Positions 25,059 to 45,851 of a stretch of 64,000 nt of DNA are shown here, piece by piece. Positions within the stretch are counted from its first letter, which is position 1. Each line of letters starts with the position of its first letter. The DNA lies in IMG/VR virus record IMGVR_UViG_3300023174_000046, positions 1-64,000 of that record, one strand, 5' to 3'. The notes beneath the pieces are model-generated. The model saw nothing but the letters and a program-made list of their open reading frames with translations, did not search any database and had not been told where the DNA came from. The position numbers and the translations under genes are program-made.

Positions 25059-25130
25059 GCCGGAGTAGCTCAGAGGTAGAGCAGCGGTTTTGTAAACCGC
25101 TGGTCGTCGGTTCGATTCCGACCTTCGGCT
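25059..25130 (+). tRNA. tRNA-Thr(TGT)
   Basis: cloverleaf; gcggt-TT TGT AA-accgc; GGTTCGATTCC. Confidence 0.93.
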
Positions 25131-25139
25131 CGTAAAAAA

Positions 25140-25757
25140 ATGAACTATCTTGAAACACACTGTGTATTGAAGTTAAACAAAAATTGGCAACCGTTTATTA
25201 TTGATACAGGTATTGAAGCTTTGGTTAACCTGTTCAAAGGTACAGTTAAAGCAGTGAACATTGAATATGATAAAGACGGTAACCCCAATAATTTTGAACC
25301 CATGGAATGGAGCAAATGGATTAAACTGCCTGTTACAAGTGAGCATTTTTCTGTGAATACTGTAAAAGGTAAGATTCGAGTTCCGAGTGTTGTTGTTTGT
25401 GAGAACTACAACAAAATACCTGTTAAAAAGAAGAAACTTAGCAAACAAACTCTTTTTGAACGCGATAGAGGCATATGTCAGTATTCAGGCAAGAAGCTTA
25501 CATACAGAACTGCTACTATTGATCATGTTATGCCTAAATCTAAAGGTGGTGCTCATGCATGGGAAAATGTAGTATTAGCACACCATGAAGTGAATCATAA
25601 GAAGGGCAACTTGACTCTTGAAGAAGCAGGTCTCAAGTTACTCAAGAAACCTTTTGAACCAAGACCAGTACCCACACCGTTTCTTATTAAAAACGAAAGA
25701 AAAATTAAAGATTGGAACTATTTTTTAGTGTCCAATTCTAATGTGGTGCTAGAATAA
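25140..25757 (+). CDS. HNH endonuclease (McrA-like)
   Basis: LFERDRGICQY, TIDHVMPKSKGG..WEN.V....VNHKKGN. Confidence 0.9.
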   Translation: MNYLETHCVLKLNKNWQPFIIDTGIEALVNLFKGTVKAVNIEYDKDGNPNNFEPMEWSKWIKLPVTSEHFSVNTVKGKIRVPSVVVCENYNKIPVKKKKLSKQTLFERDRGICQYSGKKLTYRTATIDHVMPKSKGGAHAWENVVLAHHEVNHKKGNLTLEEAGLKLLKKPFEPRPVPTPFLIKNERKIKDWNYFLVSNSNVVLE

Positions 25758-25765
25758 ATAATTTA

Positions 25766-26023
25766 ATGGCTATACAATTTGTAACTGTAGATAATATACA
25801 GACTAGAATAATGCAGTCTTTTGTTAATTTAACAAAAGCAGAACCCACAAAATACCCCGCTTTATCTACTATTCAAGTATCAACACCTGAAAATTTACAA
25901 CCTTTTCCAGTTGGTAATACTAATGTACCGCCATTGACAGTTGTTCAAATTTACGATCAATTTGCATTCAGAGTTGCAAGTCTTTCTGCTGGTAGCCTTC
26001 AATCGGTGTTATTAGGCGCTTAA
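25766..26023 (+). CDS. hypothetical late protein
   Basis: TAAATA-N5-ATG. Confidence 0.6.
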   Translation: MAIQFVTVDNIQTRIMQSFVNLTKAEPTKYPALSTIQVSTPENLQPFPVGNTNVPPLTVVQIYDQFAFRVASLSAGSLQSVLLGA

Positions 26024-26028
26024 TACAA

Positions 26029-26079
26029 TTGCATTATTCTTAATATCTTTTAATATACTTGACGTGTAGTTCTTTATCA
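26029..26079 (+). promoter_or_regulatory. tRNA operon promoter plus boxA-like element
   Basis: TTGCAT-N16-TAATAT; AGTTCTTTATCA at 26068-26079. Confidence 0.6.
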
Positions 26080-26084
26080 TTTTA

Positions 26085-26155
26085 GCGGTATTAGTTTAGT
26101 GGTAGAACTGGTGCTTGCCAAGCATCGAGTGACAGTTCGATTCTGTCATACCGCA
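26085..26155 (+). tRNA. tRNA-Gly(GCC)
   Basis: gcggtat/ataccgc acceptor; ggtgc-TT GCC AA-gcatc. Confidence 0.9.
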
Positions 26156-26158
26156 GTG

Positions 26159-26246
26159 GGACAGGTGGCAGAGTTGGTCTATTGCATCTGACTTGAAATC
26201 AGAAGTACCAGCAATGGTACCGTGGGTTCGAATCCTACCCTGTCCG
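26159..26246 (+). tRNA. tRNA-Ser(TGA)
   Basis: tctga-CT TGA AA-tcaga; long variable arm. Confidence 0.93.
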
Positions 26247-26254
26247 AGTTTTTA

Positions 26255-26328
26255 GGTCTGTTAGCTCAATTGGTCAGAGCACCGCCCTGTCACGGCGGGG
26301 GTTGTGGGTTCGAGCCCCATACGGACCG
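26255..26328 (+). tRNA. tRNA-Asp(GTC)
   Basis: ccgcc-CT GTC AC-ggcgg. Confidence 0.93.
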
Positions 26329-26331
26329 TTT

Positions 26332-26404
26332 TGCCAGGTGGTGCAATTGGTAGCACAGCAGACTTTGGATCTGCGTGTTCTAGGTTCGAGTCCTAGCCTG
26401 GCAG
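26332..26404 (+). tRNA. tRNA-Gln(TTG)
   Basis: gcaga-CT TTG GA-tctgc. Confidence 0.92.
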
Positions 26405-26447
26405 TTTTTTCTTGTTATTGTAAGAAGTTCTTGTATAATTATACAAT

Positions 26448-26522
26448 AGGCGATTAGCTCAGTGGTAGAGCTTCTCCTTTACACGGAGGGGGTCGGGGGT
26501 TCGAATCCCTCATCGCCTACCA
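26448..26522 (+). tRNA. tRNA-Val(TAC)
   Basis: tctcc-TT TAC AC-ggagg; encoded CCA; own TTGTTA-N16-TATAAT promoter. Confidence 0.93.
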
Positions 26523-26533
26523 TTTTTTTTATT

Positions 26534-26605
26534 GGCCTTGTCGTCTAAGGGTTAGGATAAGCGACTTTCACTCGCTTGATACGGGTTCGAATCCCGTCGG
26601 GGCTA
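26534..26605 (+). tRNA. tRNA-Glu(TTC)
   Basis: agcga-CT TTC AC-tcgct; acceptor stem has three G-U pairs. Confidence 0.88.
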
Positions 26606-26824
26606 TTATTTCTTAGTTTTTAGCTCTTCAACTGGAGTTCTAAGTTCACCAATTTGTTTGAAGTTCAATTCACGCCCATTTGTATCACAGACTGCTTGTC
26701 CATCTACATACCCAATCATGCGATTTCCTTGTTGAACTGGCATTACTCTCTTATCACCAAGATAGCGGTAGCGATGAATACAATTTTTATGACCCGGTTT
26801 AGATGATACTTTAGCAGCTCCCAT
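26606..26824 (-). CDS. hypothetical protein antisense within the tRNA cluster
   Basis: ORF fills the gap between tRNA-Glu and tRNA-Asn. Confidence 0.55.
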   Translation of the reverse strand: MGAAKVSSKPGHKNCIHRYRYLGDKRVMPVQQGNRMIGYVDGQAVCDTNGRELNFKQIGELRTPVEELKTKK

Positions 26825-26896
26825 ATACAATATATATTTGTAATAATTTAAATTCCACTTGAAATGTTTAATAAATCCTATATCATTGTAAATAAT

Positions 26897-26971
26897 TGCT
26901 CGGTAGCTCAGCGGTAGAGCGGTGCACTGTTAATGCATTGGTCGTAGGTTCGATCCCTACTCGAGCAGCCA
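26897..26971 (+). tRNA. tRNA-Asn(GTT)
   Basis: gtgca-CT GTT AA-tgcat; encoded CCA. Confidence 0.93.
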
Positions 26972-28118: not shown

Positions 28119-28689
28119 AGTTAAATAATTCAAAATCTTTTTTATAAAAATCTATAATAATTTCTAACGACAACGGTGTAAACCATTTTTTTAAATTCTT
28201 ATCTGTATTAGTTTGCCTCATGCGCATAGTATAGTCCAATTTCAAATCCAATTTTTCATTTATTTTTTGACAAGATTCGTTAAAGTTTTCATATCTATAT
28301 ATACAGTCAGCGATGCATGCATCATTTTCATAAAAAAAGCTATATTGGGGTACAAAATGAATTTCTGCGCATAAAGAAGTTTTATTGAAATTTAAACAAA
28401 ATAATTCAATATCTGAAAACTGCAAAGCTTCTTTTGACCATGTTATAATATGCCCGGGATCTGTTATAGCATCAACATATGTAGAAATAAATCTATCTAA
28501 TGGATTTCTTGTAAAGCCAAATTTAAAATAATCTTTATGTGTTTTTGTCTCAGGAATTTTCGAAAGTGGTGCGTGGTAAATATTTGGTAACTGCCCTAGT
28601 GTGGAATGATCTAGCTGCGTCATTATTGTAGTTGAACCAGTTTTTGGAACAGAAGTGAATATAAATTTTTTGTCGTGATTAACAATCAT
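28084..28689 (-). CDS. sulfotransferase family 2 protein
   Basis: PKTGSTT 5'-PSB loop, RNPLDRFIS 3'-PB motif, HFVPQ, YKKDFELFNY. Confidence 0.85.
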   Translation of the reverse strand: MIVNHDKKFIFTSVPKTGSTTIMTQLDHSTLGQLPNIYHAPLSKIPETKTHKDYFKFGFTRNPLDRFISTYVDAITDPGHIITWSKEALQFSDIELFCLNFNKTSLCAEIHFVPQYSFFYENDACIADCIYRYENFNESCQKINEKLDLKLDYTMRMRQTNTDKNLKKWFTPLSLEIIIDFYKKDFELFNYEIPDIKSLFC

Positions 28690-29834
28690 ATATCAGAGAT
28701 ACGTGTATAATGTCTACCACCATCAAACTTATTGTTAGTAATTATCTCTATATATTTCTTAAATTGTTCTTTGCTTAAGTTCTTAGAAGGGAAAGAAAAG
28801 AAATTGCAGCAATTGTGCTTGATTGCATACTCACAAGAATAGTCATCGTACACAAGGCATGATCTTATGCCTTCTACTTTATTGGCACAAATATTAACTC
28901 CTTGCCCGGTTCTACAAAACGCAAGAACTAGATCAACATTTTTTTTAAGCAGTTGCTTGGCTGATTCTTTGACGTATATATTGTAATCACAATCTTTGCC
29001 TGAGAATGTTCCGTAATCAATATAATCAATCTTATATTCATTCAACAACTCTATTGCGAGTTCCTTAGCCTCATAACCAGAATGATCAGAGCATAAACCT
29101 ATACGCAATGTATCATACAATACATTTTTTTCATAGAATTCTAATTCTAACGGTGTTCCTAATACATAGAATTTATCTGTTAAGATTGCATTAACCTTTA
29201 AATTATTTTTTATGTAGTGATTATAAATAGGACATATATAATATTCATTTTTTACTGTTTCTTTATTTTCAATCATTATTGATGCATACTTAAAAAACAA
29301 TTCTGGTTTTTTAAAGAAATATAAACCTGCTGCAGCGTTATCGCTTATAACTTCTTTTTCTTTTGTTTCAACAACAAATCCATCTTCACCCAACCTTGCA
29401 TAGCTATGATCGGGGCTATTCGCTTTAAAGGTAAGCAGTGATGCATCGTATTTAATAAACAAGTCTAGATCAAAATTTGGCGCAAAAGTAACATCCGGAG
29501 TATAGACAACAAGCGGCAGGGCGTTGTCAATATATTCACGAGAATACAAACAAGTACATAATGCACCGCCTGTTAATTCATTTAATTCTATAATCGTTAT
29601 ATTATTGCCAAATTTTTTCTTTAAAAAACTATCGATTGAAAAATTTAAAACGTGTTGCTTCTGAACAATAAAAATTATATTTGCGTCACTCAAGTTAAAG
29701 GGTGTCAATGCATGCTCTAATATTGTCTTCTTATTACAAGGTATCATTGGCTTGGGCATCAAATAACCTGCTTCTTTAAAGCGGTTTGCAGAGCCAGCTA
29801 TAGGTAATACTAAGTTATATTTTTTTGAGCTCAT
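28686..29834 (-). CDS. sugar-phosphate nucleotidyltransferase fused to RpiB/LacAB isomerase
   Basis: N: PIAGSANRF..GY..PKP, EKEVISD.A.AGLY; C: SDHSGY, CRTGQG.NI.ANKV.GIR, HN.CN, FDGGRH..RI. Confidence 0.85.
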   Translation of the reverse strand: MSSKKYNLVLPIAGSANRFKEAGYLMPKPMIPCNKKTILEHALTPFNLSDANIIFIVQKQHVLNFSIDSFLKKKFGNNITIIELNELTGGALCTCLYSREYIDNALPLVVYTPDVTFAPNFDLDLFIKYDASLLTFKANSPDHSYARLGEDGFVVETKEKEVISDNAAAGLYFFKKPELFFKYASIMIENKETVKNEYYICPIYNHYIKNNLKVNAILTDKFYVLGTPLELEFYEKNVLYDTLRIGLCSDHSGYEAKELAIELLNEYKIDYIDYGTFSGKDCDYNIYVKESAKQLLKKNVDLVLAFCRTGQGVNICANKVEGIRSCLVYDDYSCEYAIKHNCCNFFSFPSKNLSKEQFKKYIEIITNNKFDGGRHYTRISDI

Positions 29835-31673: not shown

Positions 31674-31680
31674 TTTTATT

Positions 31681-31754
31681 CGGGCATTAGCACAGCCTGG
31701 TAGTGCACTTGCTTTGGGAGCAAGATGTCGCAGGTTCAAATCCTGCATGCCCGA
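31681..31754 (+). tRNA. tRNA-Pro(TGG)
   Basis: cttgc-TT TGG GA-gcaag. Confidence 0.93.
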
Positions 31755-31761
31755 AGTTTTT

Positions 31762-31839
31762 TGTTGGGTGGACGTTTTAGCGTTTTCCCTGTCCTTTAAA
31801 ACAACTGAAGAGAGAAACGCGACAAGTTGTTTACCAGCA
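31762..31839 (+). ncRNA. unannotated structured RNA (three-way junction with kissing loops)
   Basis: P1 tgttgg/ccagca, P2 ggac/gtcc, P3 aaacaact/agttgttt, loop-loop gcgtttt/gaaacgc. Confidence 0.5.
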
Positions 31840-31841
31840 TT

Positions 31842-31924
31842 GGGTAGATACCGAAGTGGCCAAACGGGGGAGACTGTAAATCTCTTGGCTTACGCCTTCA
31901 GTGGTTCGAATCCACTTCTGCCCA
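31842..31924 (+). tRNA. tRNA-Tyr(GTA)
   Basis: ggaga-CT GTA AA-tctct; long variable arm. Confidence 0.93.
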
Positions 31925-31930
31925 AATTTC

Positions 31931-32014
31931 CGTCGCATGGCGAAATGGCAGACGCGCTAGCCTTAGGAGCTAGTACCGCAAGGTGTGTAGGTTCAAGTCC
32001 TACTGTGACGACCA
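31931..32014 (+). tRNA. tRNA-Leu(TAG)
   Basis: ctagc-CT TAG GA-gctag; variable arm; encoded CCA. Confidence 0.92.
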
Positions 32015-32021
32015 TTATAAT

Positions 32022-32094
32022 GGGGGTGTAGCTCATCTGGTAGAGCGGGACCTTTGCAAGGTCTAGGTAGCGGGTTCGAGTCCTGTCACCTCCA
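32022..32094 (+). tRNA. tRNA-Ala(TGC)
   Basis: GGGGGTG/CACCTCC with G3-U70; TT TGC AA loop. Confidence 0.93.
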
Positions 32095-32130
32095 TGTTAT
32101 TAAAGTAAGATCCAAGGACTAAGTAATTAT

Positions 32131-33613: not shown

Positions 33614-34105
33614 ATGAATCAAAACGATTTTCAAAAATCTATGAAGTTTGTATTGGATGCAGAAGGTGGTTACACCAACGACCCAGCTGATCCAGGTGGT
33701 GAGACCAATTATGGCATTGACAAGAGAAGTCATGCAGATGTGGATATCAAAGCATTAACTGTGGAACAAGCCACAGACATATATTTCACTGAGTATTGGG
33801 TTCGGTTCAATTGTGAACAATTTGCATGGCCCCTTAATTGTGTTTATTTTGACAGCTGTGTGAACACTGGCAACAAACAAAGCAACAAATTCTTGCAACG
33901 AGCAGTGGGCACTGAGGCTGATGGTGTGTTGGGACCCAAAACATTGGGTGCCATTAACAGCAAGCGCGCAGACACAGTTGCCAATGCTACCATTGATCAA
34001 CGCCAACGATTTTATGAAACATTGGCACAGAACAAGCCTGCGCTCAAAAAGTTTCTCAAGGGCTGGACCAACAGAAACAACAATCTTAGAAAATTTATTG
34101 CTTAG
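33614..34105 (+). CDS. GH108 endolysin with C-terminal peptidoglycan-binding domain
   Basis: EGGY.NDP.DPGGETNYGI; DGVLGPKT; KFLKGW.NR. Confidence 0.9.
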   Translation: MNQNDFQKSMKFVLDAEGGYTNDPADPGGETNYGIDKRSHADVDIKALTVEQATDIYFTEYWVRFNCEQFAWPLNCVYFDSCVNTGNKQSNKFLQRAVGTEADGVLGPKTLGAINSKRADTVANATIDQRQRFYETLAQNKPALKKFLKGWTNRNNNLRKFIA

Positions 34106-34110
34106 AGGTT

Positions 34111-34965
34111 TTAGTAAATACCTATTGTCATGGCTGTCCACAAATCTAATTTAGTTGAACTATCCAATCTTTGCACACACATGGTTAAAGTCTTTCCATT
34201 TGCAGTCAATGGTATGTTGCTCAATGTAGTTTCAGCTTCAGAGTTTTTACCAATCACAATGCCGCTGTGTCTTTTTGTTCCACCTGTAAAGCCGTTGGGA
34301 GTATTGCTTCCAAATGCATCTGTGTAGAATCGGTATTCAGCATCTGCATTTACAGAAGAAAAAGCTGGTACGGTGCCTGTTATTGTTGCATCCTCATACC
34401 ACACATACCCTATAGTGCTTGAATTAGCATTGTTATTGCCCAGTTCATATTCTAATATTTTCACAGTTTGTGATGCAGTACTTTTGGCCCTTATTGTAAT
34501 CATAGGAATTAAATTGTCAGACATGGTCCAACCACGGTGAGTAAAAATACCAAAATTATGAAATGTATAAATTTCAGGCACTTGTTCTAATACAGTCACA
34601 TTTCCTGATACTGGTGTTGTGCCCCATGGCAACACTCTCAAAGCACCCACTTCAATGCCATTGACTGTGGCCACACGTATCACATTGCCATACACATCTG
34701 TACCTGTGGAATGATCCACAAGCCCCACATCACCAATGTTCACATTGCTAGCAGATAAAATTAATTGTATGTCTTGTGGGTTTGTAATGTATGTCATTAC
34801 AGCTGTCTTGGGATACACATCAACTGAGCTAACTGGTGGTGCAGAATCTCTGTAGCTGTAACGGGTTACAGAGACTGCAGGGTATCGTGTATCATTGTCA
34901 AACTGTACAAATTTCTGGTATTCAACTTGTTCTTGTTGACCGAATACATTAAAATTATAAGACAT
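34111..34965 (-). CDS. hypothetical, probably structural protein
   Basis: 284 aa, beta-rich composition; TAAATA upstream. Confidence 0.65.
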   Translation of the reverse strand: MSYNFNVFGQQEQVEYQKFVQFDNDTRYPAVSVTRYSYRDSAPPVSSVDVYPKTAVMTYITNPQDIQLILSASNVNIGDVGLVDHSTGTDVYGNVIRVATVNGIEVGALRVLPWGTTPVSGNVTVLEQVPEIYTFHNFGIFTHRGWTMSDNLIPMITIRAKSTASQTVKILEYELGNNNANSSTIGYVWYEDATITGTVPAFSSVNADAEYRFYTDAFGSNTPNGFTGGTKRHSGIVIGKNSEAETTLSNIPLTANGKTLTMCVQRLDSSTKLDLWTAMTIGIY

Positions 34966-34985
34966 AGTATTATGAATATTTAAGG

Positions 34986-35030
34986 TTGCATGTAGTAATA
35001 TTGCCTATATACTAATAGTGTTCTTTAACA
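34986..35030 (+). promoter_or_regulatory. tmRNA promoter plus boxA
   Basis: TTGCAT-N16-TATACT; TGTTCTTTAACA at 35019-35030. Confidence 0.7.
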
Positions 35031-35035
35031 ACGAT

Positions 35036-35439
35036 GGGGGTGAATGGAATCGATTGAATGGTAGATTTCATGAGTGCAAGTACCGGGGCATGCCGGTTAC
35101 CAATAGCAATCATATTAAATGCCGAAGATAACTTCGACATGGCTATGAGTCTTGAAGAGGCTGACGCAATTCTTGCAACAGCAGGCTTCGTGGATTCAGA
35201 AGCTGAACTCGAACTAGTTTAGTTCGATCGTTCTACTGTAGAGTGAAGCTTGTAAAGTAGAGCGTGTTACTGGCTTTCGTATGGTCTGGGTTTTAACAAT
35301 TAATAGATCATACGTACAAAATTGTTATCAGTAAGGGCTTTTTGCTTAGTTTAATCCTTATGAAAATTCAACTAAAATAAACTTGTAGTGCTTATGAGAG
35401 AAGCTTTTCAAGACCTGGGTTCAAATCCCAGCACCTCCA
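35036..35439 (+). ncRNA. ssrA: tmRNA
   Basis: 5' GGGGGTGAATGGAATCGA; 3' GACCTGGGTTCAAATCCCAGCACCTCCA; Ala-type G3-U acceptor; tag frame 35121-35222. Confidence 0.9.
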
Positions 35440-35468
35440 TTTTTTATAAAAAAAGATTAAATAATAAT

Positions 35469-35651
35469 GTGGGTAGTTTAACAGTAAGCTTGACAGGTTC
35501 GTGCTTGTATCAGCGCTTTCATGAAGAACGCAATCGTATTTTAGAGAACAAATGGTACATGTCTGAACGTGAAGGCAAAGATGTTGGTTTTGAGAGAGCT
35601 TTACTGGATTGGGTTTTTAATCACAGAGACAAGTGGATAAAAGGAAAGTAA
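35469..35651 (+). CDS. small DUF4032-like protein of Verrucomicrobiota type
   Basis: S.LY..F..ER..IL..KWYMSE.EG.DVGFERALLDW...HR.KW; TAAATA-N5-GTG. Confidence 0.75.
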   Translation: MGSLTVSLTGSCLYQRFHEERNRILENKWYMSEREGKDVGFERALLDWVFNHRDKWIKGK

Positions 35652-38105
35652 TTATTTCTTTGTGTTAATTGTAGGTTGTGGTGCAACTCTGTTACCCGAT
35701 TCATTATTCAAGTCCATTGCAATGGTTCTTACTGCATCATTATCTCTTTTCAACGTTAATGGTAGATTCTTAAACGTGTGACTATGACCATACACAATGA
35801 CGCTATCTGGATCTGGAATTTGACCTGCAGTAGTAGTGGTAAATACCGGTGCAGGGTTACCACCCGCTTGACCTGTCATAGAAGCACACACAGGTAGATC
35901 TTTAGTCGCAAAAACTTCAACTGTCCCACCTTGTGGATCAACACCTGTACCAACTAAAGTACCTGTAGGTACATACCCAATTATTGCACCTGTAACTAAT
36001 GCATTATAACCGATAATTTTTGGTAACGCATTATTTGTTTGACCGGTAACAATTGTGCGGTTTGTTTCTTGAATTTCAGTAGGTGCAGTAATATGATTAA
36101 CAGTTAGTTCACCTTCTATGTGTGCACCACCACCCACAACCATGTTACGAGCGACCCCTAAATTACTATCAATAACAACTTGCTGATTGTAGCGTTGCTT
36201 GATATTAACAATATCAGCAATTAATTGTAATTTTTGACCGCCATCAATACACACTTCATTTTCACTGGCTATATTAACTTGCTGACCTGCAATGTTTGTA
36301 ATAGTGCCACTTACATTTACCGGTCCATAACTCTTGAAGTTTATACCACCAGCACCCACCATTAAATTGTATCTGTTACCAATTGTTTGTGTGTAAGTAC
36401 CGCCTGGGAGATCATCCACGTGCACATATTCAACTACCGGGCTTGGTTGCTGGCAGTTGAAAACACCTTGTGGGTGAACAATGACAGCATTAACACTAAT
36501 TTTACCAACCTTATCAATTCTTGTTGAAGGTAAATCATTAATATCCATACCAATTGTTTCAATTTTATTTTTTGTAATATTGATAATTTCGCTACCACCC
36601 ACACCCATTTGCTTCTCCAGATTTGTAAAATTGTCCATGTTATCAGAAATGTATTTTGCTATTTGCTGCTTACGAGGGTCTTCAAGAAAATCACCATCTT
36701 GTGAGCTAGGGCTCAATCCTGAGCCTTTGCATGCTGGGCATGTTTGACCGAAAATTGTTCCAACACCGGGAAATTTGCCACTAGTGGCAGGTATGCCTAT
36801 ACCAAAAGGTATAACTGCAGGGAGCCCCATGTTTGACCATGGTGAATTGATAAGAGAAGTTGTTTCACCAGTACCTGCATAAACAAAGATGTTATTAATT
36901 TTCCAATAAAAATCTTGACTGTCTGCGCAAACTGGACATGCAGCGTTTTTACCGCTTTTTGATTGAAAGGGTGATGTGAGATTTATGAACCCTTTTTTAA
37001 GAGCAGTTGTTCTTTTTGTTTCAAATAATTGCTTGAGATCAGCTAGGCCGCGTAACAGCTCTTTGTATTGTAAATGTGGTGTGTAGTTTAAATTGCCTAT
37101 TTTTCTGTATAAATCACCTCTTATAACATTATCATAATCTCTACCTACGTAAAGATTTTTAAAGCCATTAACAGTTAGGAACTGGTCTTGCATAACCAAC
37201 TTTTGGTCTGATTGAGTTGCAAGTTCTATATTTGTAAAATTATTAAATTCTTTAAATGAACCGGAGAAGTGAGTCATTTTTAGTGACTCACGGTTATCTG
37301 TATTGATAAACTCTAGTGTGCCGCCTTTTTGATTTATAACGTATTTGTTCCGGTAAGTATCAACATTTATATCAAATACATCTTTTCCAGATAGAGAATA
37401 ATTTTCATAATAACCAGGATAGTCTTGACCTGGTGAACTATCACCAACATTATCTAAACTATCATATATGCCTTTCCAATCTTCTTTGCCGTACGCAACA
37501 GCAAAATAAACTGGATGCATAATATCACCATCAGTAAAAAAGACATAGACGTGTGAACCAACGTTGGGCACACCAAACGTACCCTTGGCTCGATTTGAAT
37601 AGCTATTGGGTACATAATTATAGCTATATTTGTTTGTTATGTTTGTATTGTACTTTGCAGGGTCATTAAATGCATCGTTTAGCTTGTATTCAACAGACTC
37701 ATAAACATTTGCTGGCTTCTCTCCAATGTTATCAATATTCTGATTACCGACATCAGTATTTTTTTCTCGTGTTGGTTCGAAAGTGCTTAATCTTGCAGTA
37801 TCAGAAATAGATCCTACAGTTTTAAAGAAATTAAATCTACCACTTGCAGCTTCACCACTCACAGGAGCCGCACATTCAGCCCATGGTAATTGGAGCTTCA
37901 AATCCTCCAATATTGTATTCATGCTGCTATTAATATTGTCACCTAGGAACTTGAATTTTTTATCGTTCAGTGTATCAACCCAGCCGCGATAAGTTGTAGG
38001 CATTAAATGCGGTACCCATACTTTAACGCGTCCTCTTTTCTGTGGATCGTTATTCTGAACTACCATTCCCATGTAGTTGCCGTAGAATTTCTGTCTTTTA
38101 GCCAT
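35652..38105 (-). CDS. gp5/VgrG-like baseplate hub-spike protein
   Basis: Y.G.VV.N.DP.K.GRVKV OB-fold, LPWA, P.VGS.V.VFF..GD...PVY; beta-helix repeats; C-terminal HSH. Confidence 0.85.
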   Translation of the reverse strand: MAKRQKFYGNYMGMVVQNNDPQKRGRVKVWVPHLMPTTYRGWVDTLNDKKFKFLGDNINSSMNTILEDLKLQLPWAECAAPVSGEAASGRFNFFKTVGSISDTARLSTFEPTREKNTDVGNQNIDNIGEKPANVYESVEYKLNDAFNDPAKYNTNITNKYSYNYVPNSYSNRAKGTFGVPNVGSHVYVFFTDGDIMHPVYFAVAYGKEDWKGIYDSLDNVGDSSPGQDYPGYYENYSLSGKDVFDINVDTYRNKYVINQKGGTLEFINTDNRESLKMTHFSGSFKEFNNFTNIELATQSDQKLVMQDQFLTVNGFKNLYVGRDYDNVIRGDLYRKIGNLNYTPHLQYKELLRGLADLKQLFETKRTTALKKGFINLTSPFQSKSGKNAACPVCADSQDFYWKINNIFVYAGTGETTSLINSPWSNMGLPAVIPFGIGIPATSGKFPGVGTIFGQTCPACKGSGLSPSSQDGDFLEDPRKQQIAKYISDNMDNFTNLEKQMGVGGSEIINITKNKIETIGMDINDLPSTRIDKVGKISVNAVIVHPQGVFNCQQPSPVVEYVHVDDLPGGTYTQTIGNRYNLMVGAGGINFKSYGPVNVSGTITNIAGQQVNIASENEVCIDGGQKLQLIADIVNIKQRYNQQVVIDSNLGVARNMVVGGGAHIEGELTVNHITAPTEIQETNRTIVTGQTNNALPKIIGYNALVTGAIIGYVPTGTLVGTGVDPQGGTVEVFATKDLPVCASMTGQAGGNPAPVFTTTTAGQIPDPDSVIVYGHSHTFKNLPLTLKRDNDAVRTIAMDLNNESGNRVAPQPTINTKK

Positions 38106-41030: not shown

Positions 41031-41614
41031 TCTTATCGTTTACTGGTCCACAAAGTTCAGGTAAGACTACTCTTCTAAAGAAGTGTAAAGAGTATTATGG
41101 TTCGAAGTTATGTTATATTGATGAAGTTACTAGACTAATTAAACGTTGGCATAATTGTGATATAAATGAAGAAGGTGCAAGTGATGTTACGCAGACATTA
41201 ATTCTAAATAAAGAATTTGAGAATTTGTTTTATAATTACAAAGGATTTGGATTTCAAGGCATATTGCATGATCGTTGCTTGATGGATGGCATGGTTTATA
41301 CAAGTTATTTTGCTGGTAGTAGACTAAATGATTTTCCTGTATCTAATAGCTTAGGTTTGTTATACTATACAAATTATATTAAAAAGTATGATCATATCTT
41401 TTATCCAAGTCCTCATGATGTTCCGCTGGTTGATGATGGTGAGAGAAGCATTAATAAAGAATTTAGGGATGCTATTATTGATAAGTATGAAAATTTTTGG
41501 CTAAAAGATGAGAGATTGAAAGATAAAGTTACTATTTTAAGAGGGACTGTTGACGAGCGAATGGAACAGATTAAGTCAAAGATATGTCAGTTGATGCCAA
41601 GCCTTTCTGTTTAG
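41027..41614 (+). CDS. P-loop nucleotide kinase-like (AAA_28/NadR-type) protein
   Basis: GPQSSGKTT, E..R, DRC..D..VY, DDGER. Confidence 0.8.
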   Translation: MILSFTGPQSSGKTTLLKKCKEYYGSKLCYIDEVTRLIKRWHNCDINEEGASDVTQTLILNKEFENLFYNYKGFGFQGILHDRCLMDGMVYTSYFAGSRLNDFPVSNSLGLLYYTNYIKKYDHIFYPSPHDVPLVDDGERSINKEFRDAIIDKYENFWLKDERLKDKVTILRGTVDERMEQIKSKICQLMPSLSV

Positions 41615-42903
41615 CTCCTTGGGCAGGCATTCACGCACTACCAGATGGGTTGGTGTACCCATGTTGCATGTCTACATTCGATCCCGAAAATTCGTTCGGT
41701 GATCTCAATAAAAATACAATTGAAGATATTTTAAATTCAGAAAAAGCAAAGCAATTTAGATGCAAGATGATGGCAAATAAGCCGGATGAGAGAGCTTGTA
41801 GTCATTGCATAAGTGAAGAAAAAACAGGAACAAAAAGTTTCCGTAATCACTGGAATACTAAGTATGAACATACTCTTCCTTTTGTTAAAGAAACAGATAA
41901 AGATGGTTATTATCGATTTAAAAATTTTCCATATATTGATATAAGACTATCAAGCTTGTGTAATTTTAAATGTAGAATGTGTCATAGTGGCTTGAGCTCT
42001 GCTTGGTTATTAGAAGACATAAAGTATGAATCAAATTATCAAAATTCTTTTAATCTTAAAACCGGTGTTATTGAGATACCACAAAAAGAAAAACTTATTA
42101 AATTTATTATTGATAGGATTGAGCATGTGGAGGAGATTGAGTTTGCAGGTGGTGAACCTTTTCTAATAGCAGATTATTTTACTCTAATTAAAGAATTTAA
42201 AAGAGCAAAAAATTTTAACGTTAGGATAAGATTTCATACAAATGCATCTTCTTTGTATTGTAAGGGTGAATATATACCAAACTTGCTCAAGGAGTTTAAA
42301 AATGTTTTTATAATGTTGAGTATTGACGGTTACAGTGAAGTTAATGACTACATGAGAAAAGGTAGTGTATATAATAAAATTGTTACAAATATAACTTTAC
42401 TTAAACAAATAGTACCACAAGCATTCTTGAGATTGGTACCGACAATTAGCATACCAACTGTATATAGTGTGCCTTTCTTGTATGTAGATTTCTTACGCAA
42501 AGGTTTAATTCGGCATGAGGATATTGCATGCAGACCTCTTTACGGGCCTGAATATCTTAACATACAGACACTACCATTAGAAGATAAATTAAAAATTTTA
42601 AAGTTCTATAATTACTTTATTGATAACATAACAGCTAAACTTCTACAACACTTTCCAGATGAAAGCGTCACATATGTTAAGCAAGAATTTTCATCAATTA
42701 TGAATTTCATGTTGCTTAAAAATCAAATTGTGCAATTTAATAGCAATAGGTTTAAGGAGAGTATTAAGCGGCTTGATATTCGACGAGACGAAAGTTACGA
42801 AGATATTTCACCAGAAACTGCTCATCTTTTATCAGGCAGTGTTTCAATATACAATCTAGATAACAAATATAATGAGTTGAAGACTTTCATAGATAGCATA
42901 TAA
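41584..42903 (+). CDS. radical SAM protein with N-terminal SPASM/twitch domain
   Basis: FCLAPW...PCC...CSHC; CNFKCRMC; GGEPF; SIDG. Confidence 0.88.
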   Translation: MSVDAKPFCLAPWAGIHALPDGLVYPCCMSTFDPENSFGDLNKNTIEDILNSEKAKQFRCKMMANKPDERACSHCISEEKTGTKSFRNHWNTKYEHTLPFVKETDKDGYYRFKNFPYIDIRLSSLCNFKCRMCHSGLSSAWLLEDIKYESNYQNSFNLKTGVIEIPQKEKLIKFIIDRIEHVEEIEFAGGEPFLIADYFTLIKEFKRAKNFNVRIRFHTNASSLYCKGEYIPNLLKEFKNVFIMLSIDGYSEVNDYMRKGSVYNKIVTNITLLKQIVPQAFLRLVPTISIPTVYSVPFLYVDFLRKGLIRHEDIACRPLYGPEYLNIQTLPLEDKLKILKFYNYFIDNITAKLLQHFPDESVTYVKQEFSSIMNFMLLKNQIVQFNSNRFKESIKRLDIRRDESYEDISPETAHLLSGSVSIYNLDNKYNELKTFIDSI

Positions 42904-44354: not shown

Positions 44355-45851
44355 TTAGAAGTAGACTGATTGTGTTCCAGGGGTAAAGGCAACGCCTAGA
44401 CCCGAGATGATGATAACGTGGTAGTACAAGTTAGCACCAAATATATTGTCGACTACACCGTAGCGGGTCATGAGACCAACACGAGGAGCGAAATCATTTG
44501 GACCAATTGTACGCTGTACCATAACAGGGATGTATGGGCAGTAGATAATACCGGTATCATAAAACTCTGGACCCTTGTAGCCCAATAGGGCGTACTCGAG
44601 AGGAGTTTGACGAGAACCAGATTGAAACTGTGCCTCAGTACGTGTGTCACGATACACATTAAAACGTCCACCAAGTGAACCTACCTTAGCTACGCCTACT
44701 GGTTGTGTGTTTACATTACCCTGTACAGGTACCCACTGGAATTCAGGGAGCATCTCAAGGATAGCGCAAACGCGAGGTGTTGCAACAACAAAGTTGGCTG
44801 CACCACGACGATTACGAACAGCAATACGGTTAGCTTCGATAATTAGTCTCTGATAGAAATCGCGATTACGTTCAACGAGCCAACGACCGTCTGCTGAAGC
44901 TGGGCTCCAAACAGAGTAGCCGGTGCCTGCGCCAGCGTTTAGAGCAACCTGGATCATGCGGATGATCATTTCACGATCGATTTCTGCCTGTAGCTCATAG
45001 CTCATAGCATTTGTCAATTCAGTGTCAATGTCAATACCGTTCATGTTCTTAAGATCTTGCTCCAATTCTACTGACCAGCGAGCGCCTAGTCTACGTGTAC
45101 CGGCTTCAACTGCTGTCTTCTCGAAGGAAACTACGACCTGAGGGATTGCTCCTGTCAATTCGTAATCCTTGAGAATACGTGCTACACCTGCATCTGATCC
45201 GAGGATCGAGAAAGCAGAGTTACCGGACAAGCCGGCAGATGATGTACCAGTGAAACGTGTATCTAGGAACTGATAACCCAATTCTTGACCGTCTGTACCT
45301 GCAGCGGTAGGACCGCCGTAGTTTGTACCTACAGTTGTACCGGTAGCTGATGGTTGACCATCAACACCGTTACCAAGGGCTTCGTTATCGTAACGATAGC
45401 GCAAAGCAAATGCCAAACCAACTGGGCCTGACATTGGCTGAACGCCAACGATTTCATTAGAAATAAGTTCTGGGAACGTTCTACGAATCATCGGAATCAA
45501 GATCTTTGGAAGACGATAATCACCTGCTGCATAGGTATCAGTACCAGGAGTACCAGCTGGGTTATTAACCCAATTGGATGTCTGGAATGTACCTAGAGAA
45601 CCACCGGCATTGCCAGCGGCATTTGAACCGGCCTGATCAGGATATGAAGGGTTATAATTAGGCCCTGCTTCCCTCAAGCACCATTGTTCTTGGTTTTCCA
45701 AGAGAATGGCTGTGTTCAAACGGGTATGATCATCTTCGATTGCTGCAACATTCTTGGAAGAGTAATCCAATACTGGACTCCACTTTTCAAGAAGAGCTGC
45801 GGCTCTTGATTCGTCAATATATGACTGCGAAGGACGAACAACTTTTTTCAT
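44355..45851 (-). CDS. gp23: major capsid protein (T4 gp23 family)
   Basis: KWSPVL, AILLENQ, GVQPM.GP.GL.FALR, WSVELEQDL, E.DRE, YCPYIP, TRYG. Confidence 0.97.
   Translation of the reverse strand: MKKVVRPSQSYIDESRAAALLEKWSPVLDYSSKNVAAIEDDHTRLNTAILLENQEQWCLREAGPNYNPSYPDQAGSNAAGNAGGSLGTFQTSNWVNNPAGTPGTDTYAAGDYRLPKILIPMIRRTFPELISNEIVGVQPMSGPVGLAFALRYRYDNEALGNGVDGQPSATGTTVGTNYGGPTAAGTDGQELGYQFLDTRFTGTSSAGLSGNSAFSILGSDAGVARILKDYELTGAIPQVVVSFEKTAVEAGTRRLGARWSVELEQDLKNMNGIDIDTELTNAMSYELQAEIDREMIIRMIQVALNAGAGTGYSVWSPASADGRWLVERNRDFYQRLIIEANRIAVRNRRGAANFVVATPRVCAILEMLPEFQWVPVQGNVNTQPVGVAKVGSLGGRFNVYRDTRTEAQFQSGSRQTPLEYALLGYKGPEFYDTGIIYCPYIPVMVQRTIGPNDFAPRVGLMTRYGVVDNIFGANLYYHVIIISGLGVAFTPGTQSVYF

What the first reader, a model, noticed from the sequence alone, without database searches (positions are those of the whole stretch)
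35121..35222. Phage tmRNA with an unusually long, acidic tag lacking the terminal Ala-Ala degron
Seen: after the resume-like context ATTAAAT|GCC the frame reads AEDNFDMAMSLEEADAILATAGFVDSEAELELV-stop (33 codons). Known: most bacterial tags are roughly 10-15 aa and end in (L)AA for ClpXP. Inference: the phage tmRNA may rescue ribosomes while sparing the tagged proteins or rerouting them to another protease, which would compete with host ssrA quality control. The resume codon is my assignment.
Basis: partly seen in the sequence, partly recalled or inferred. Interest (0 to 1): 0.6.

Follow-up and report, generated by a model that had tools for sequence, protein, structure and literature searches.

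The report
Phage tmRNA with conserved long tag
A 217-kb uncultured lake phage carries a complete ribosome-rescue RNA (tmRNA) whose 33-residue, very acidic tag ends in Leu-Val instead of Ala-Ala and is conserved as a peptide across many phages, so the tag sequence itself seems to matter, though nobody knows for what.

Summary
Observation confirmed. Window 35036-35439 (+) is a one-piece tmRNA (Rfam RF00023, 91.4 bits against a cut-off of 47). The Rfam consensus resume codon falls on GCC 35121. The frame runs 33 codons to TAG 35220-35222.

The frame holds up by comparison. Thirteen distinct tag DNAs from related lake phages give dN/dS of about 0.16. Variable columns by codon position are 8/7/20. 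The stop is TAG or TAA at the same place. One relative has a stop six codons upstream of the resume codon. All structural helices show compensatory pairs; none lies inside the tag frame.

Sixty protein clusters from metagenomes carry the same tag, always with ...ELV. A sister group shares the core S[LV][AE]EADA[IF]L...GFVD.E but ends in LLAA or LMAA. One member sits in a complete 204-kb phage with no match to this phage's gp23 capsid protein.

The tag is unusual against 81 viral-contig tmRNAs: median 12 aa, 70 ending AA. It is not unprecedented: mycobacteriophage Bxz1 encodes a 25-aa acidic tag ending ALV.

The phage has no SmpB, ClpP, Lon, Tsp or SspB, so host factors must act. What happens to tagged proteins is untested. 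Host unknown. New variant of a known kind; moderate interest.

The parts
35036..35439 (+). tmRNA gene, from the mature 5' end to the discriminator A. CCA is not encoded; TTT follows.
   Evidence: Rfam RF00023 at 91.4 bits. It is the only tmRNA in the 217-kb genome. Ends were set from the acceptor-stem pairing.
35036..35042 (+). Acceptor stem, 5' strand (GGGGGUG), with G3 of the G3-U70 wobble that is the alanine identity element.
   Evidence: It pairs with 35432-35438. Seven base pairs: 2 compensatory, 1 one-sided, 0 non-pairs in 77 cells. G3-U70 is kept in all relatives.
35054..35081 (+). Helix 2, 5' strand, in three segments. It pairs with 35381-35411.
   Evidence: 23 base pairs with 10 compensatory pairs in the alifold of 11 relatives.
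35082..35097 (+). PK1 hairpin (ACCGG / CCGGU) with the invariant loop GGCAUG.
   Evidence: Five base pairs, 2 compensatory. The second PK1 stem was not identified. The loop's GGCAU is complementary to AUGCC at 35119-35123 (inference only).
35121..35123 (+). Resume codon GCC (Ala).
   Evidence: Rfam consensus alignment. ARAGORN calls the same codon in sibling L146. Peptide conservation starts here.
35121..35219 (+). Tag reading frame of 33 codons. The peptide has net charge -10 and ends Leu-Glu-Leu-Val.
   Evidence: dN/dS 0.155 and variable columns of 8/7/20 by codon position. Sixty protein clusters carry the same tag.
35220..35222 (+). Stop codon TAG. Relatives have TAA at the same position.
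35209..35227 (+). Helix 5: codons 30-32 form the 5' strand, the Val codon GUU is the loop, and the stop codon begins the 3' strand.
   Evidence: Six base pairs in alifold (8 by eye), 3 compensatory. All changes on the coding strand are synonymous.
35229..35264 (+). PK2 main stem (35229-35237 / 35256-35264).
   Evidence: Nine base pairs, 5 compensatory, no non-pairs.
35294..35327 (+). PK3 main stem (35294-35301 / 35320-35327).
   Evidence: Eight base pairs, 5 compensatory.
35345..35376 (+). PK4 main stem (35345-35351 / 35370-35376).
   Evidence: Seven base pairs, 1 compensatory and 2 one-sided.
35415..35431 (+). T-arm of the tRNA-like domain.
   Evidence: Five base pairs, 3 compensatory.
34986..35035 (+). 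Promoter-like TTGCAT, a 16-nt spacer and TATACT (34986-34991 / 35008-35013), then a conserved 15-nt 5' leader (35020-35035).
   Evidence: Read by eye and from the upstream comparison. Siblings have TTGATT-16/17-TATAAT or sit directly behind a tRNA gene. The consensus scan did not call it. Inferred.

Best explanation
This is a working, one-piece phage tmRNA. The steps are as follows.
- It is transcribed from its own sigma-70-like promoter; in some relatives it is transcribed together with tRNA genes.
- It is trimmed at a conserved leader and given CCA by a CCA-adding enzyme.
- It is charged with alanine by the host AlaRS through the G3-U70 pair.
- It is delivered by host SmpB and EF-Tu to ribosomes stalled during infection.
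- Translation resumes at GCC 35121, adds 33 encoded residues and stops at TAG 35220, which frees the ribosome.

The appended peptide is not a passive spacer. Its core, a predicted helix-turn-helix around SLEEADAIL...GFVD, and its LELV end are kept by selection on the protein. I therefore think it is most likely a docking element for a host or unknown phage factor. That factor would decide the fate of tagged chains by a route other than the canonical Ala-Ala/ClpX contact.

Shown: the RNA anatomy, the reading frame, and selection on the peptide. Inferred: expression, charging, use of host SmpB, and everything about the fate of tagged proteins.
For: - Family membership: Rfam gives 91.4 bits over the full model.
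- Structure: 31 compensatory pairs lie in the acceptor stem, H2, the PK1 hairpin, H5, PK2-4 and the T-arm. None lies in the helices predicted inside the tag frame. G3-U70 is kept in every relative.
- Reading frame: dN/dS is 0.155, with third-position bias at P = 0.003 and stops in both other frames. There is a stop just upstream of the resume codon in L009, and frame-shifting indels upstream.
- Spread: sixty 90%-identity clusters from lake metagenomes carry the tag with an invariant ELV.
- Deep conservation of the core: against group B locus L148, 14 of 18 core residues are the same while 10 of those codons differ synonymously. The rest of the RNA is only about 40% identical.
- Two phage lineages: the core occurs in a T4-like lineage (major capsid protein 81% identical in G001) and in a complete 204-kb phage with terminal repeats and no gp23 match.
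- No phage partner: no SmpB, ClpP, SspB, Lon, S41 protease or Clp-type AAA+ is found in the genome. The only AAA hits are the gp44 clamp loader and UvsX.
- Fold: AlphaFold2 with the tag alignment predicts helices at 11-21 and 26-32, mean pLDDT 77.
- Background: the ClpX recognition complex holds the Ala-Ala-COO- end of the E. coli ssrA tag (PMC10638403). Long Mycoplasma tags are degraded by Lon instead (PMC8138137).
Against:
- ARAGORN does not call the window's gene.
- The second stem of PK1 was not found.
- CCA is not encoded.
- Several tag codons never vary even synonymously (F5, D6, S10, A14, A16, L18), so part of the conservation may be at RNA level.
- The last four codons also form helix 5, which constrains them.
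- No partner for the peptide is known. Pfam, hhalign against Bxz1 and the Atlas search gave no lead.
- The host is unknown, so a host tag of similar design cannot be excluded.
Confidence: 0.6

Rival explanations
1. Sparing or solubilising tag. The phage rescues ribosomes but deliberately leaves the products undegraded. The acidic tail only keeps truncated chains soluble and out of ClpXP.
For: There is no Ala-Ala end. Net charge is -10 with no basic residue. The phage has no protease of its own. Bxz1 has independently arrived at a long acidic tag ending LV, with no detectable homology.
Against: A merely acidic, non-degron tail would not need position-specific conservation (F5, D6, M7, M9, S10, the EADA-IL block, GF-D, LELV) at dN/dS 0.155. 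Sister tags with the same core keep LLAA or LMAA and are much less acidic, at -5. A hydrophobic C-terminus can still be a signal for proteases other than ClpXP; ClpAP, Lon and FtsH all degrade ssrA-tagged proteins (PMC8138137).
Confidence: 0.2
2. Ordinary degron with a tolerated end. The tag is still a ClpXP or ClpAP degradation signal, and the long core is an enhancer comparable to the SspB-binding part of the E. coli tag. LELV would be just a weaker variant of LLAA.
For: The sister group has the same core plus LLAA or LMAA. The tag ends in a hydrophobic residue, which is the general rule for tags (PMC4131195). From my own knowledge, not checked here, engineered ssrA variants ending in Val are still degraded, but more slowly.
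Against: ELV is invariant in 60 clusters, so it is selected rather than drifting. A Glu at position -3 and an acidic context are unlike the Ala-Ala-COO- contact seen in ClpX (PMC10638403). No SspB is found in the phage.
Confidence: 0.15
3. Not a rescue RNA in practice. It would be a decoy that titrates host SmpB or AlaRS (as proposed for the TLD-only gene of phage DS6A), or the frame would be an ordinary small gene of 54 codons starting at ATG 35058.
For: A TLD-only phage tmRNA exists, and such a molecule inhibits tmRNA (PMC4131195). An ATG-started 54-codon ORF exists in the window, and gene callers annotate it.
Against: The full mRNA-like domain, helix 5 and PK2-4 are all conserved with covariation, which a decoy would not need. 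The region upstream of the resume codon has indels that shift the frame, only 31% amino-acid identity, variable or absent start codons, and a stop in L009.
Confidence: 0.05

Closest known systems
Bacterial one-piece tmRNA (ssrA, Rfam RF00023), e.g. E. coli
   Same: A tRNA-like domain with G3-U70, the long helix 2, PK1, a resume codon GCN after an A-rich spacer, a tag frame ending in or at helix 5, and PK2-4. It depends on SmpB.
   Different: The tag is three times longer (33 against 10 encoded residues), has net charge -10, and ends LELV rather than LAA. The stop lies on the 3' strand of helix 5 rather than in its loop. CCA is not encoded. The second PK1 stem is unclear. The gene is in a phage that lacks SmpB.
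Mycobacteriophage Bxz1 (cluster C) tmRNA
   Same: It is phage-encoded, sits next to a tRNA cluster in a large myovirus, and has a long (25 aa) acidic (-7) tag without basic residues that ends ALV.
   Different: No detectable sequence homology between the tags (hhalign). The host phylum is different (Actinobacteria). The function of its tag is also unknown as far as the searched literature shows.
Sister group of phage tmRNAs (L083, L147, L148, L150, L152, P0181, P0182)
   Same: The peptide core S[LV][AE]EADA[IF]L...GFVD.E is homologous, the tags are 30-31 aa long, and they come from lake or other metagenomes.
   Different: They end in LLAA or LMAA, are less acidic, and have a canonical 5' end and PK1. 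At least one sits in a complete 204-kb phage with no match to this phage's gp23.
Mycoplasma / Mesoplasma long ssrA tags degraded by Lon
   Same: Long tags (about 27 aa) whose internal sequence, not an LAA end alone, directs them to a protease other than ClpXP (PMC8138137).
   Different: No sequence similarity. Those organisms lack ClpXP, whereas the host here is unknown.
Two-piece tmRNAs of marine myophages (Melnitz, pelagimyophages)
   Same: tmRNA genes in aquatic T4-like phages. About 2.3% of isolate phage genomes carry one (PMC9004378).
   Different: Those are permuted two-piece genes, some under a glutamine riboswitch. This one is a standard one-piece gene, and no riboswitch was found in the window.

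Membership tests
tmRNA (RF00023) | Scores above the family's gathering threshold over the full covariance model | tested here: met
   91.4 bits against 47, model positions 1-374.
tmRNA (RF00023) | tRNA-like domain: a 7-bp acceptor stem with G3-U70, a T-arm and a discriminator A | tested here: met
   Acceptor 35036-35042 / 35432-35438 and T-arm 35415-35431, both with compensatory changes. G3-U70 is kept in all 15 relatives.
tmRNA (RF00023) | Internal reading frame that starts at a resume codon without a start codon and ends at a stop in or at helix 5 | tested here: met
   GCC 35121 to TAG 35220. dN/dS is 0.155, L009 has an upstream stop, and helix 5 covaries.
tmRNA (RF00023) | Pseudoknots PK1 to PK4 | tested here: inconclusive
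   One stem of each is supported by covariation. The crossing stems were not modelled, and the second stem of PK1 could not be found.
tmRNA (RF00023) | Works with SmpB, is charged with alanine, and tags proteins | not testable with these tools
   No SmpB in this phage or in five related records. It would have to use the host's.
tmRNA (RF00023) | Expressed as a stable RNA | not tested
   Four lake metatranscriptome runs hold 5-6% of the sampled words of 34000-36500.
ClpX C-motif-1 degron (ssrA-type end) | C-terminal Ala-Ala-COO- | tested here: not met
   The tag ends Leu-Val in the window and in all 60 clusters. The sister group does end in Ala-Ala.
Bxz1-type phage tag | Sequence homology of the tag peptide | tested here: not met
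   hhalign probability 0.4%. The likeness is in length, charge and the LV end only.

The most novel reading that the evidence does not exclude
The conserved core of the tag is a portable peptide module that phages attach to unfinished proteins through trans-translation. It would engage a specific partner: either a phage-private degradation or sequestration route that the host's ssrA system does not share, or a block on a host protease or adaptor. It has moved between unrelated jumbo-phage lineages. The LELV and LLAA ends would be two settings of the same device.
Probability: 0.25. Interest if true: 0.8.

Novelty: new variant of a known kind. Interest (0 to 1): 0.55.

Why it matters
Why some phages carry their own tmRNA is an open question, and no phage tag has been studied functionally in the literature I could search. 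This tag is long, under clear protein-level selection, abundant in lakes, shared by two phage lineages that do not share a detectable capsid gene, and present in two natural versions (LELV and LLAA).

That makes the question directly testable with a synthetic peptide or a tagged reporter: what binds it, and are tagged proteins degraded, spared or used? If the tag proves orthogonal to ClpXP, it could also serve as a new degradation or stabilisation tag. It also shows that ARAGORN-based surveys miss such genes.

Tried and rejected
I therefore have no expression data. Later work on that stretch was local alignment, regex and folding in Python only.
- Other genetic code: cluster P0001 reads the window's TAG as Q. 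The genome shows code 11, so I rejected this as a gene-caller artefact.
- Host: none of these gave a lineage.
  - The gp23 protein is only about 34% identical to cyanomyovirus proteins.
  - There is no psbA.
  - Endolysin relatives all come from unnamed metagenome contigs.
  - The baseplate hub protein has no match among GenBank phages.
- GenBank phages: blastn of the tmRNA and tblastn of both tag types found nothing.
- Peptide homology: Pfam at E up to 10, hhalign against Bxz1, the ESM Atlas feature search and a full-text search for tag strings were all blank.
- Partner in the phage: none found among SmpB, ClpP, SspB, S41, Lon and AAA_2. The AAA hits are gp44 and UvsX.
- Genome scan: the only genome-contig hit to the shared 3' 28-mer (L014) is an unrelated tmRNA with an 18-aa tag ending LAA, on a contig binned with Bacteroides uniformis. 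It is not informative.
- Left unused: I did not run the large representative-protein search. A 33-column profile has too little information to reach real proteins, and the word search had already found the family. I did not run complex prediction because no partner is proposed.

Full report
**What is there**

The window is the first 64 kb of a 217,413-bp IMG/VR virus record that CheckV rates complete. It is a T4-like myovirus:
- a Gp23 major capsid protein at 44355-45851 (-);
- a baseplate hub at 35652-38105 (-);
- a GH108 endolysin at 33614-34105 (+);
- a ribonucleotide reductase;
- 16 tRNA genes.

Its capsid protein is only about 34% identical to the nearest isolates, which are cyanomyoviruses. 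The genome has no psbA. The stretch around the finding is held by lake and freshwater metagenomes from several studies.

Rfam finds one full-length tmRNA at 35036-35442 (+), at 91.4 bits against a gathering score of 47. It is the only one in the genome. ARAGORN does not call it.

**The reading frame**

The frame has 33 sense codons (window:35121-35219:+) and stops at TAG 35220-35222. I tested the frame by comparison.

*Relatives.* They were found in three ways:
- through the neighbouring hub protein;
- through an invariant 3' 28-mer;
- through a degenerate back-translation of the tag core.

More came from look-ups of spurious ORFs that gene callers place over the tag.

*Results on fifteen group A loci, which give 13 distinct tag DNAs.*
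- The frame always has 33 codons, or 34 in two loci (L155 and L157) where one more codon precedes the stop. It ends at the same place with TAG, TAA or TGA.
- Variable columns fall 8/7/20 on codon positions 1/2/3 (P = 0.003). Mean dS is 0.61 and mean dN is 0.095, a ratio of 0.155. Both other frames hold 1-4 stops in every sequence.
- Amino-acid identity is 85% in the tag and 31% in the 15 in-frame codons before it. The upstream RNA has indels that are not multiples of three. L009 has a stop six codons before the resume codon.
- ARAGORN calls the very same frame in sibling L146.

The peptide can therefore only be made by resuming at GCC. It is not an ordinary small gene.

*Genetic code.* The genome uses the standard code. 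TAG ends 37 of 251 long ORFs, reading TAG as sense adds little open frame, and there is no suppressor tRNA. One database cluster (P0001) reads the window's TAG as Q. I take this as a gene-caller artefact.

**The RNA**

An alignment of 11 group A genes folded with RNAalifold gives the expected anatomy. Compensatory pairs, by helix:

| Helix | Compensatory pairs |
|---|---|
| Acceptor stem | 2 |
| Helix 2 (three segments) | 10 |
| PK1 hairpin | 2 |
| Helix 5 | 3 |
| PK2 stem | 5 |
| PK3 stem | 5 |
| PK4 stem | 1 |
| T-arm | 3 |

The helices that the program draws inside the tag frame have none. This fits a stretch constrained by coding rather than by pairing.

Other points:
- The G3-U70 alanine identity pair is present in every relative.
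- CCA is not encoded.
- Helix 5 is built from codons 30-32 and the stop codon, with the Val codon as its loop. All changes on its coding strand are synonymous and are matched on the other strand. RNA and peptide constraints overlap there, yet the residues L-E-L-V never change.
- I could not find the second stem of PK1. The only complement of the invariant hairpin loop GGCAU is AUGCC, which spans the resume codon. Two relatives change both partners compatibly. This is an observation, not a conclusion.
- Upstream there is a TTGCAT-16-TATACT element and a conserved 15-nt leader. Some relatives instead sit directly behind a tRNA gene. The consensus scanner did not call a promoter.

**How unusual is the tag?**

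As a baseline I sampled 120 IMG/VR loci with a generic tmRNA 5' pattern and ran ARAGORN on them.

| Measure | 81 sampled tmRNAs | Window tag |
|---|---|---|
| Length | median 12 aa, maximum 31 aa | 33 aa |
| Tags of 20 aa or more | 7 | - |
| End | 70 end in Ala-Ala | Leu-Val |
| Net charge | +4 to -5 | -10 |

The window tag lies outside the sample in both length and charge. The sample is biased towards canonical genes, and many of those contigs may carry host tmRNAs at integration sites.

The design is not unprecedented. I recalled that mycobacteriophage Bxz1 has such a tag and checked it. Its tmRNA encodes a 25-residue tag with net charge -7 that ends ALV. A profile comparison finds no homology between the two tags, so the likeness is one of design only. 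Nothing in the searchable literature discusses phage tags of this kind. Phage tmRNAs as such are known, in 2.3% of isolate genomes (PMC9004378; PMC4131195; PMC7162821).

**A tag family**

The word search with the 54-codon spurious ORF returned 60 clusters at 90% identity, all from metagenomes. Every one carries the tag in the form A[ED][DE]xFDMAMSLEEADA[IV]LAxxGF[VE]DxEAxLELV. Three have one extra residue after ELV.

The degenerate core pattern also found a sister group: L083, L147, L148, L150 and L152, later joined by P0181 and P0182. Their 30-31-residue tags share the core S[LV][AE]EADA[IF]L...GFVD.E but end in LLAA or LMAA.

The core is conserved much more deeply than the RNA. Between the window and L148, 14 of 18 core residues are identical while 10 of those codons differ synonymously. 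Outside the tag the two RNAs are only about 40% identical.

The carriers do not all share a detectable capsid gene. G001 (group A) has a capsid protein 81% identical to the window's. G002 (L147, sister group) is a complete 204-kb phage with terminal repeats and no match to gp23. The contexts of the sister-group contigs look phage-like, not bacterial.

A third, more distant group (L011, L013, L021) has a 33-residue tag ending LEAA and a tRNA with anticodon CUA next to it.

Neither tag type has a match in 50,697 GenBank phage records.

**Mechanism**

*Shown:* a complete tmRNA, its frame, and purifying selection on the peptide.

*Inferred from the known pathway:* charging by AlaRS, delivery by SmpB and EF-Tu, resumption at GCC and release at the stop.

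These factors must come from the host, or from phage proteins of unknown family. The phage has no SmpB, ClpP, SspB, Lon, S41 protease or Clp-type AAA+. Its two AAA hits are the gp44 clamp loader and UvsX. Five related records also lack SmpB.

*Fate of tagged proteins.* The E. coli ClpX recognition complex holds the Ala-Ala-COO- end of the tag (PMC10638403), and that end is absent here. ClpAP, Lon and FtsH also degrade ssrA-tagged proteins, and long Mycoplasma tags are Lon signals (PMC8138137). A hydrophobic last residue is the general rule for tags (PMC4131195).

The position-specific conservation of the whole peptide, the shared core in a group that keeps LLAA, and a predicted helix-turn-helix (pLDDT 77) together argue for a specific binding partner for the core. 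They argue against a tag that merely lacks a degron.

I cannot say whether the outcome is degradation by another route, protection, or interference with a host protease. The rivals are weighed in their own sections.

**Limits**
- The host is unknown.
Later handling of that stretch was local alignment and folding only.

**Verdict**

The functional reading is plausible in part but untested. The selection on the peptide points to a specific function. I rate this a new variant of a known kind, of moderate interest.

Noticed in passing
window 35088-35092 and 35119-35123: The invariant PK1 hairpin loop GGCAU is complementary to AUGCC, which is the last two spacer bases plus the resume codon. Relatives L159 and L161 change the loop (G to U) and the spacer (A to G) in a way that keeps or extends this pairing. 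No other partner for a second PK1 stem was seen, whereas the sister group has a canonical PK1 ending about 9 nt before its resume codon.
   Followed up: partly
window 35020-35035, and upstream of the tmRNA in L009, L145-L161: A conserved 15-nt 5' leader (GTTCWTTRACAAC-like) directly precedes the mature 5' end in all group A loci. It follows either a TTGnnT-16/17-TATAAT-like promoter or, with about 18 nt between, a tRNA gene. It may be a processing signal.
   Followed up: partly
L011 4415-4491, L013 8960-9036, L021 8811-8887: The distant long-tag group carries a tRNA with anticodon CUA (ARAGORN calls it 'Pyl') about 1 kb from the tmRNA. Its tag ends with TAG followed by TAA. These phages may read TAG as sense, in which case the tag would gain one residue.
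   Followed up: no
window 35469-35651 (+): A small ORF just downstream of the tmRNA (60 codons if started at GTG 35469) matches the C-terminal part of Pfam DUF4032 (E 1.2e-5).
   Followed up: no
window 25059-26971 and 31680-32095: Two clusters with 12 tRNA genes lie upstream of the tmRNA. Four more, including Ile-UAU, Leu-UAA and Arg-UCU, lie elsewhere in the genome. This set suits A/T-ending codons in a 35% GC phage.
   Followed up: no
L033 5727-6111, L114 2160-2577: Another family of long tags on viral contigs: 29 residues, basic rather than acidic, ending QRQ[ST]LAV, in permuted (two-piece) tmRNAs.
   Followed up: no
L014 5825-6203: A contig binned with a Bacteroides uniformis MAG carries a tmRNA (144.8 bits). 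Read by eye, its tag has 18 residues ending LALAA. ARAGORN picks a different, probably wrong, frame. The tag is unlike what I recall of Bacteroides tags (from memory, not checked), so the contig may be mis-binned.
   Followed up: partly
window 41584-42903 (+) and 28686-29834 (-): A radical SAM / SPASM protein and a nucleotidyl-transferase / RpiB fusion are encoded in the phage.
   Followed up: no
L158 313-834, 1889-3162: In one sibling phage the tmRNA lies between an HSP20 small heat-shock gene and a C1q-domain protein. The neighbours of the tmRNA differ from phage to phage, so no conserved partner gene sits next to it.
   Followed up: partly
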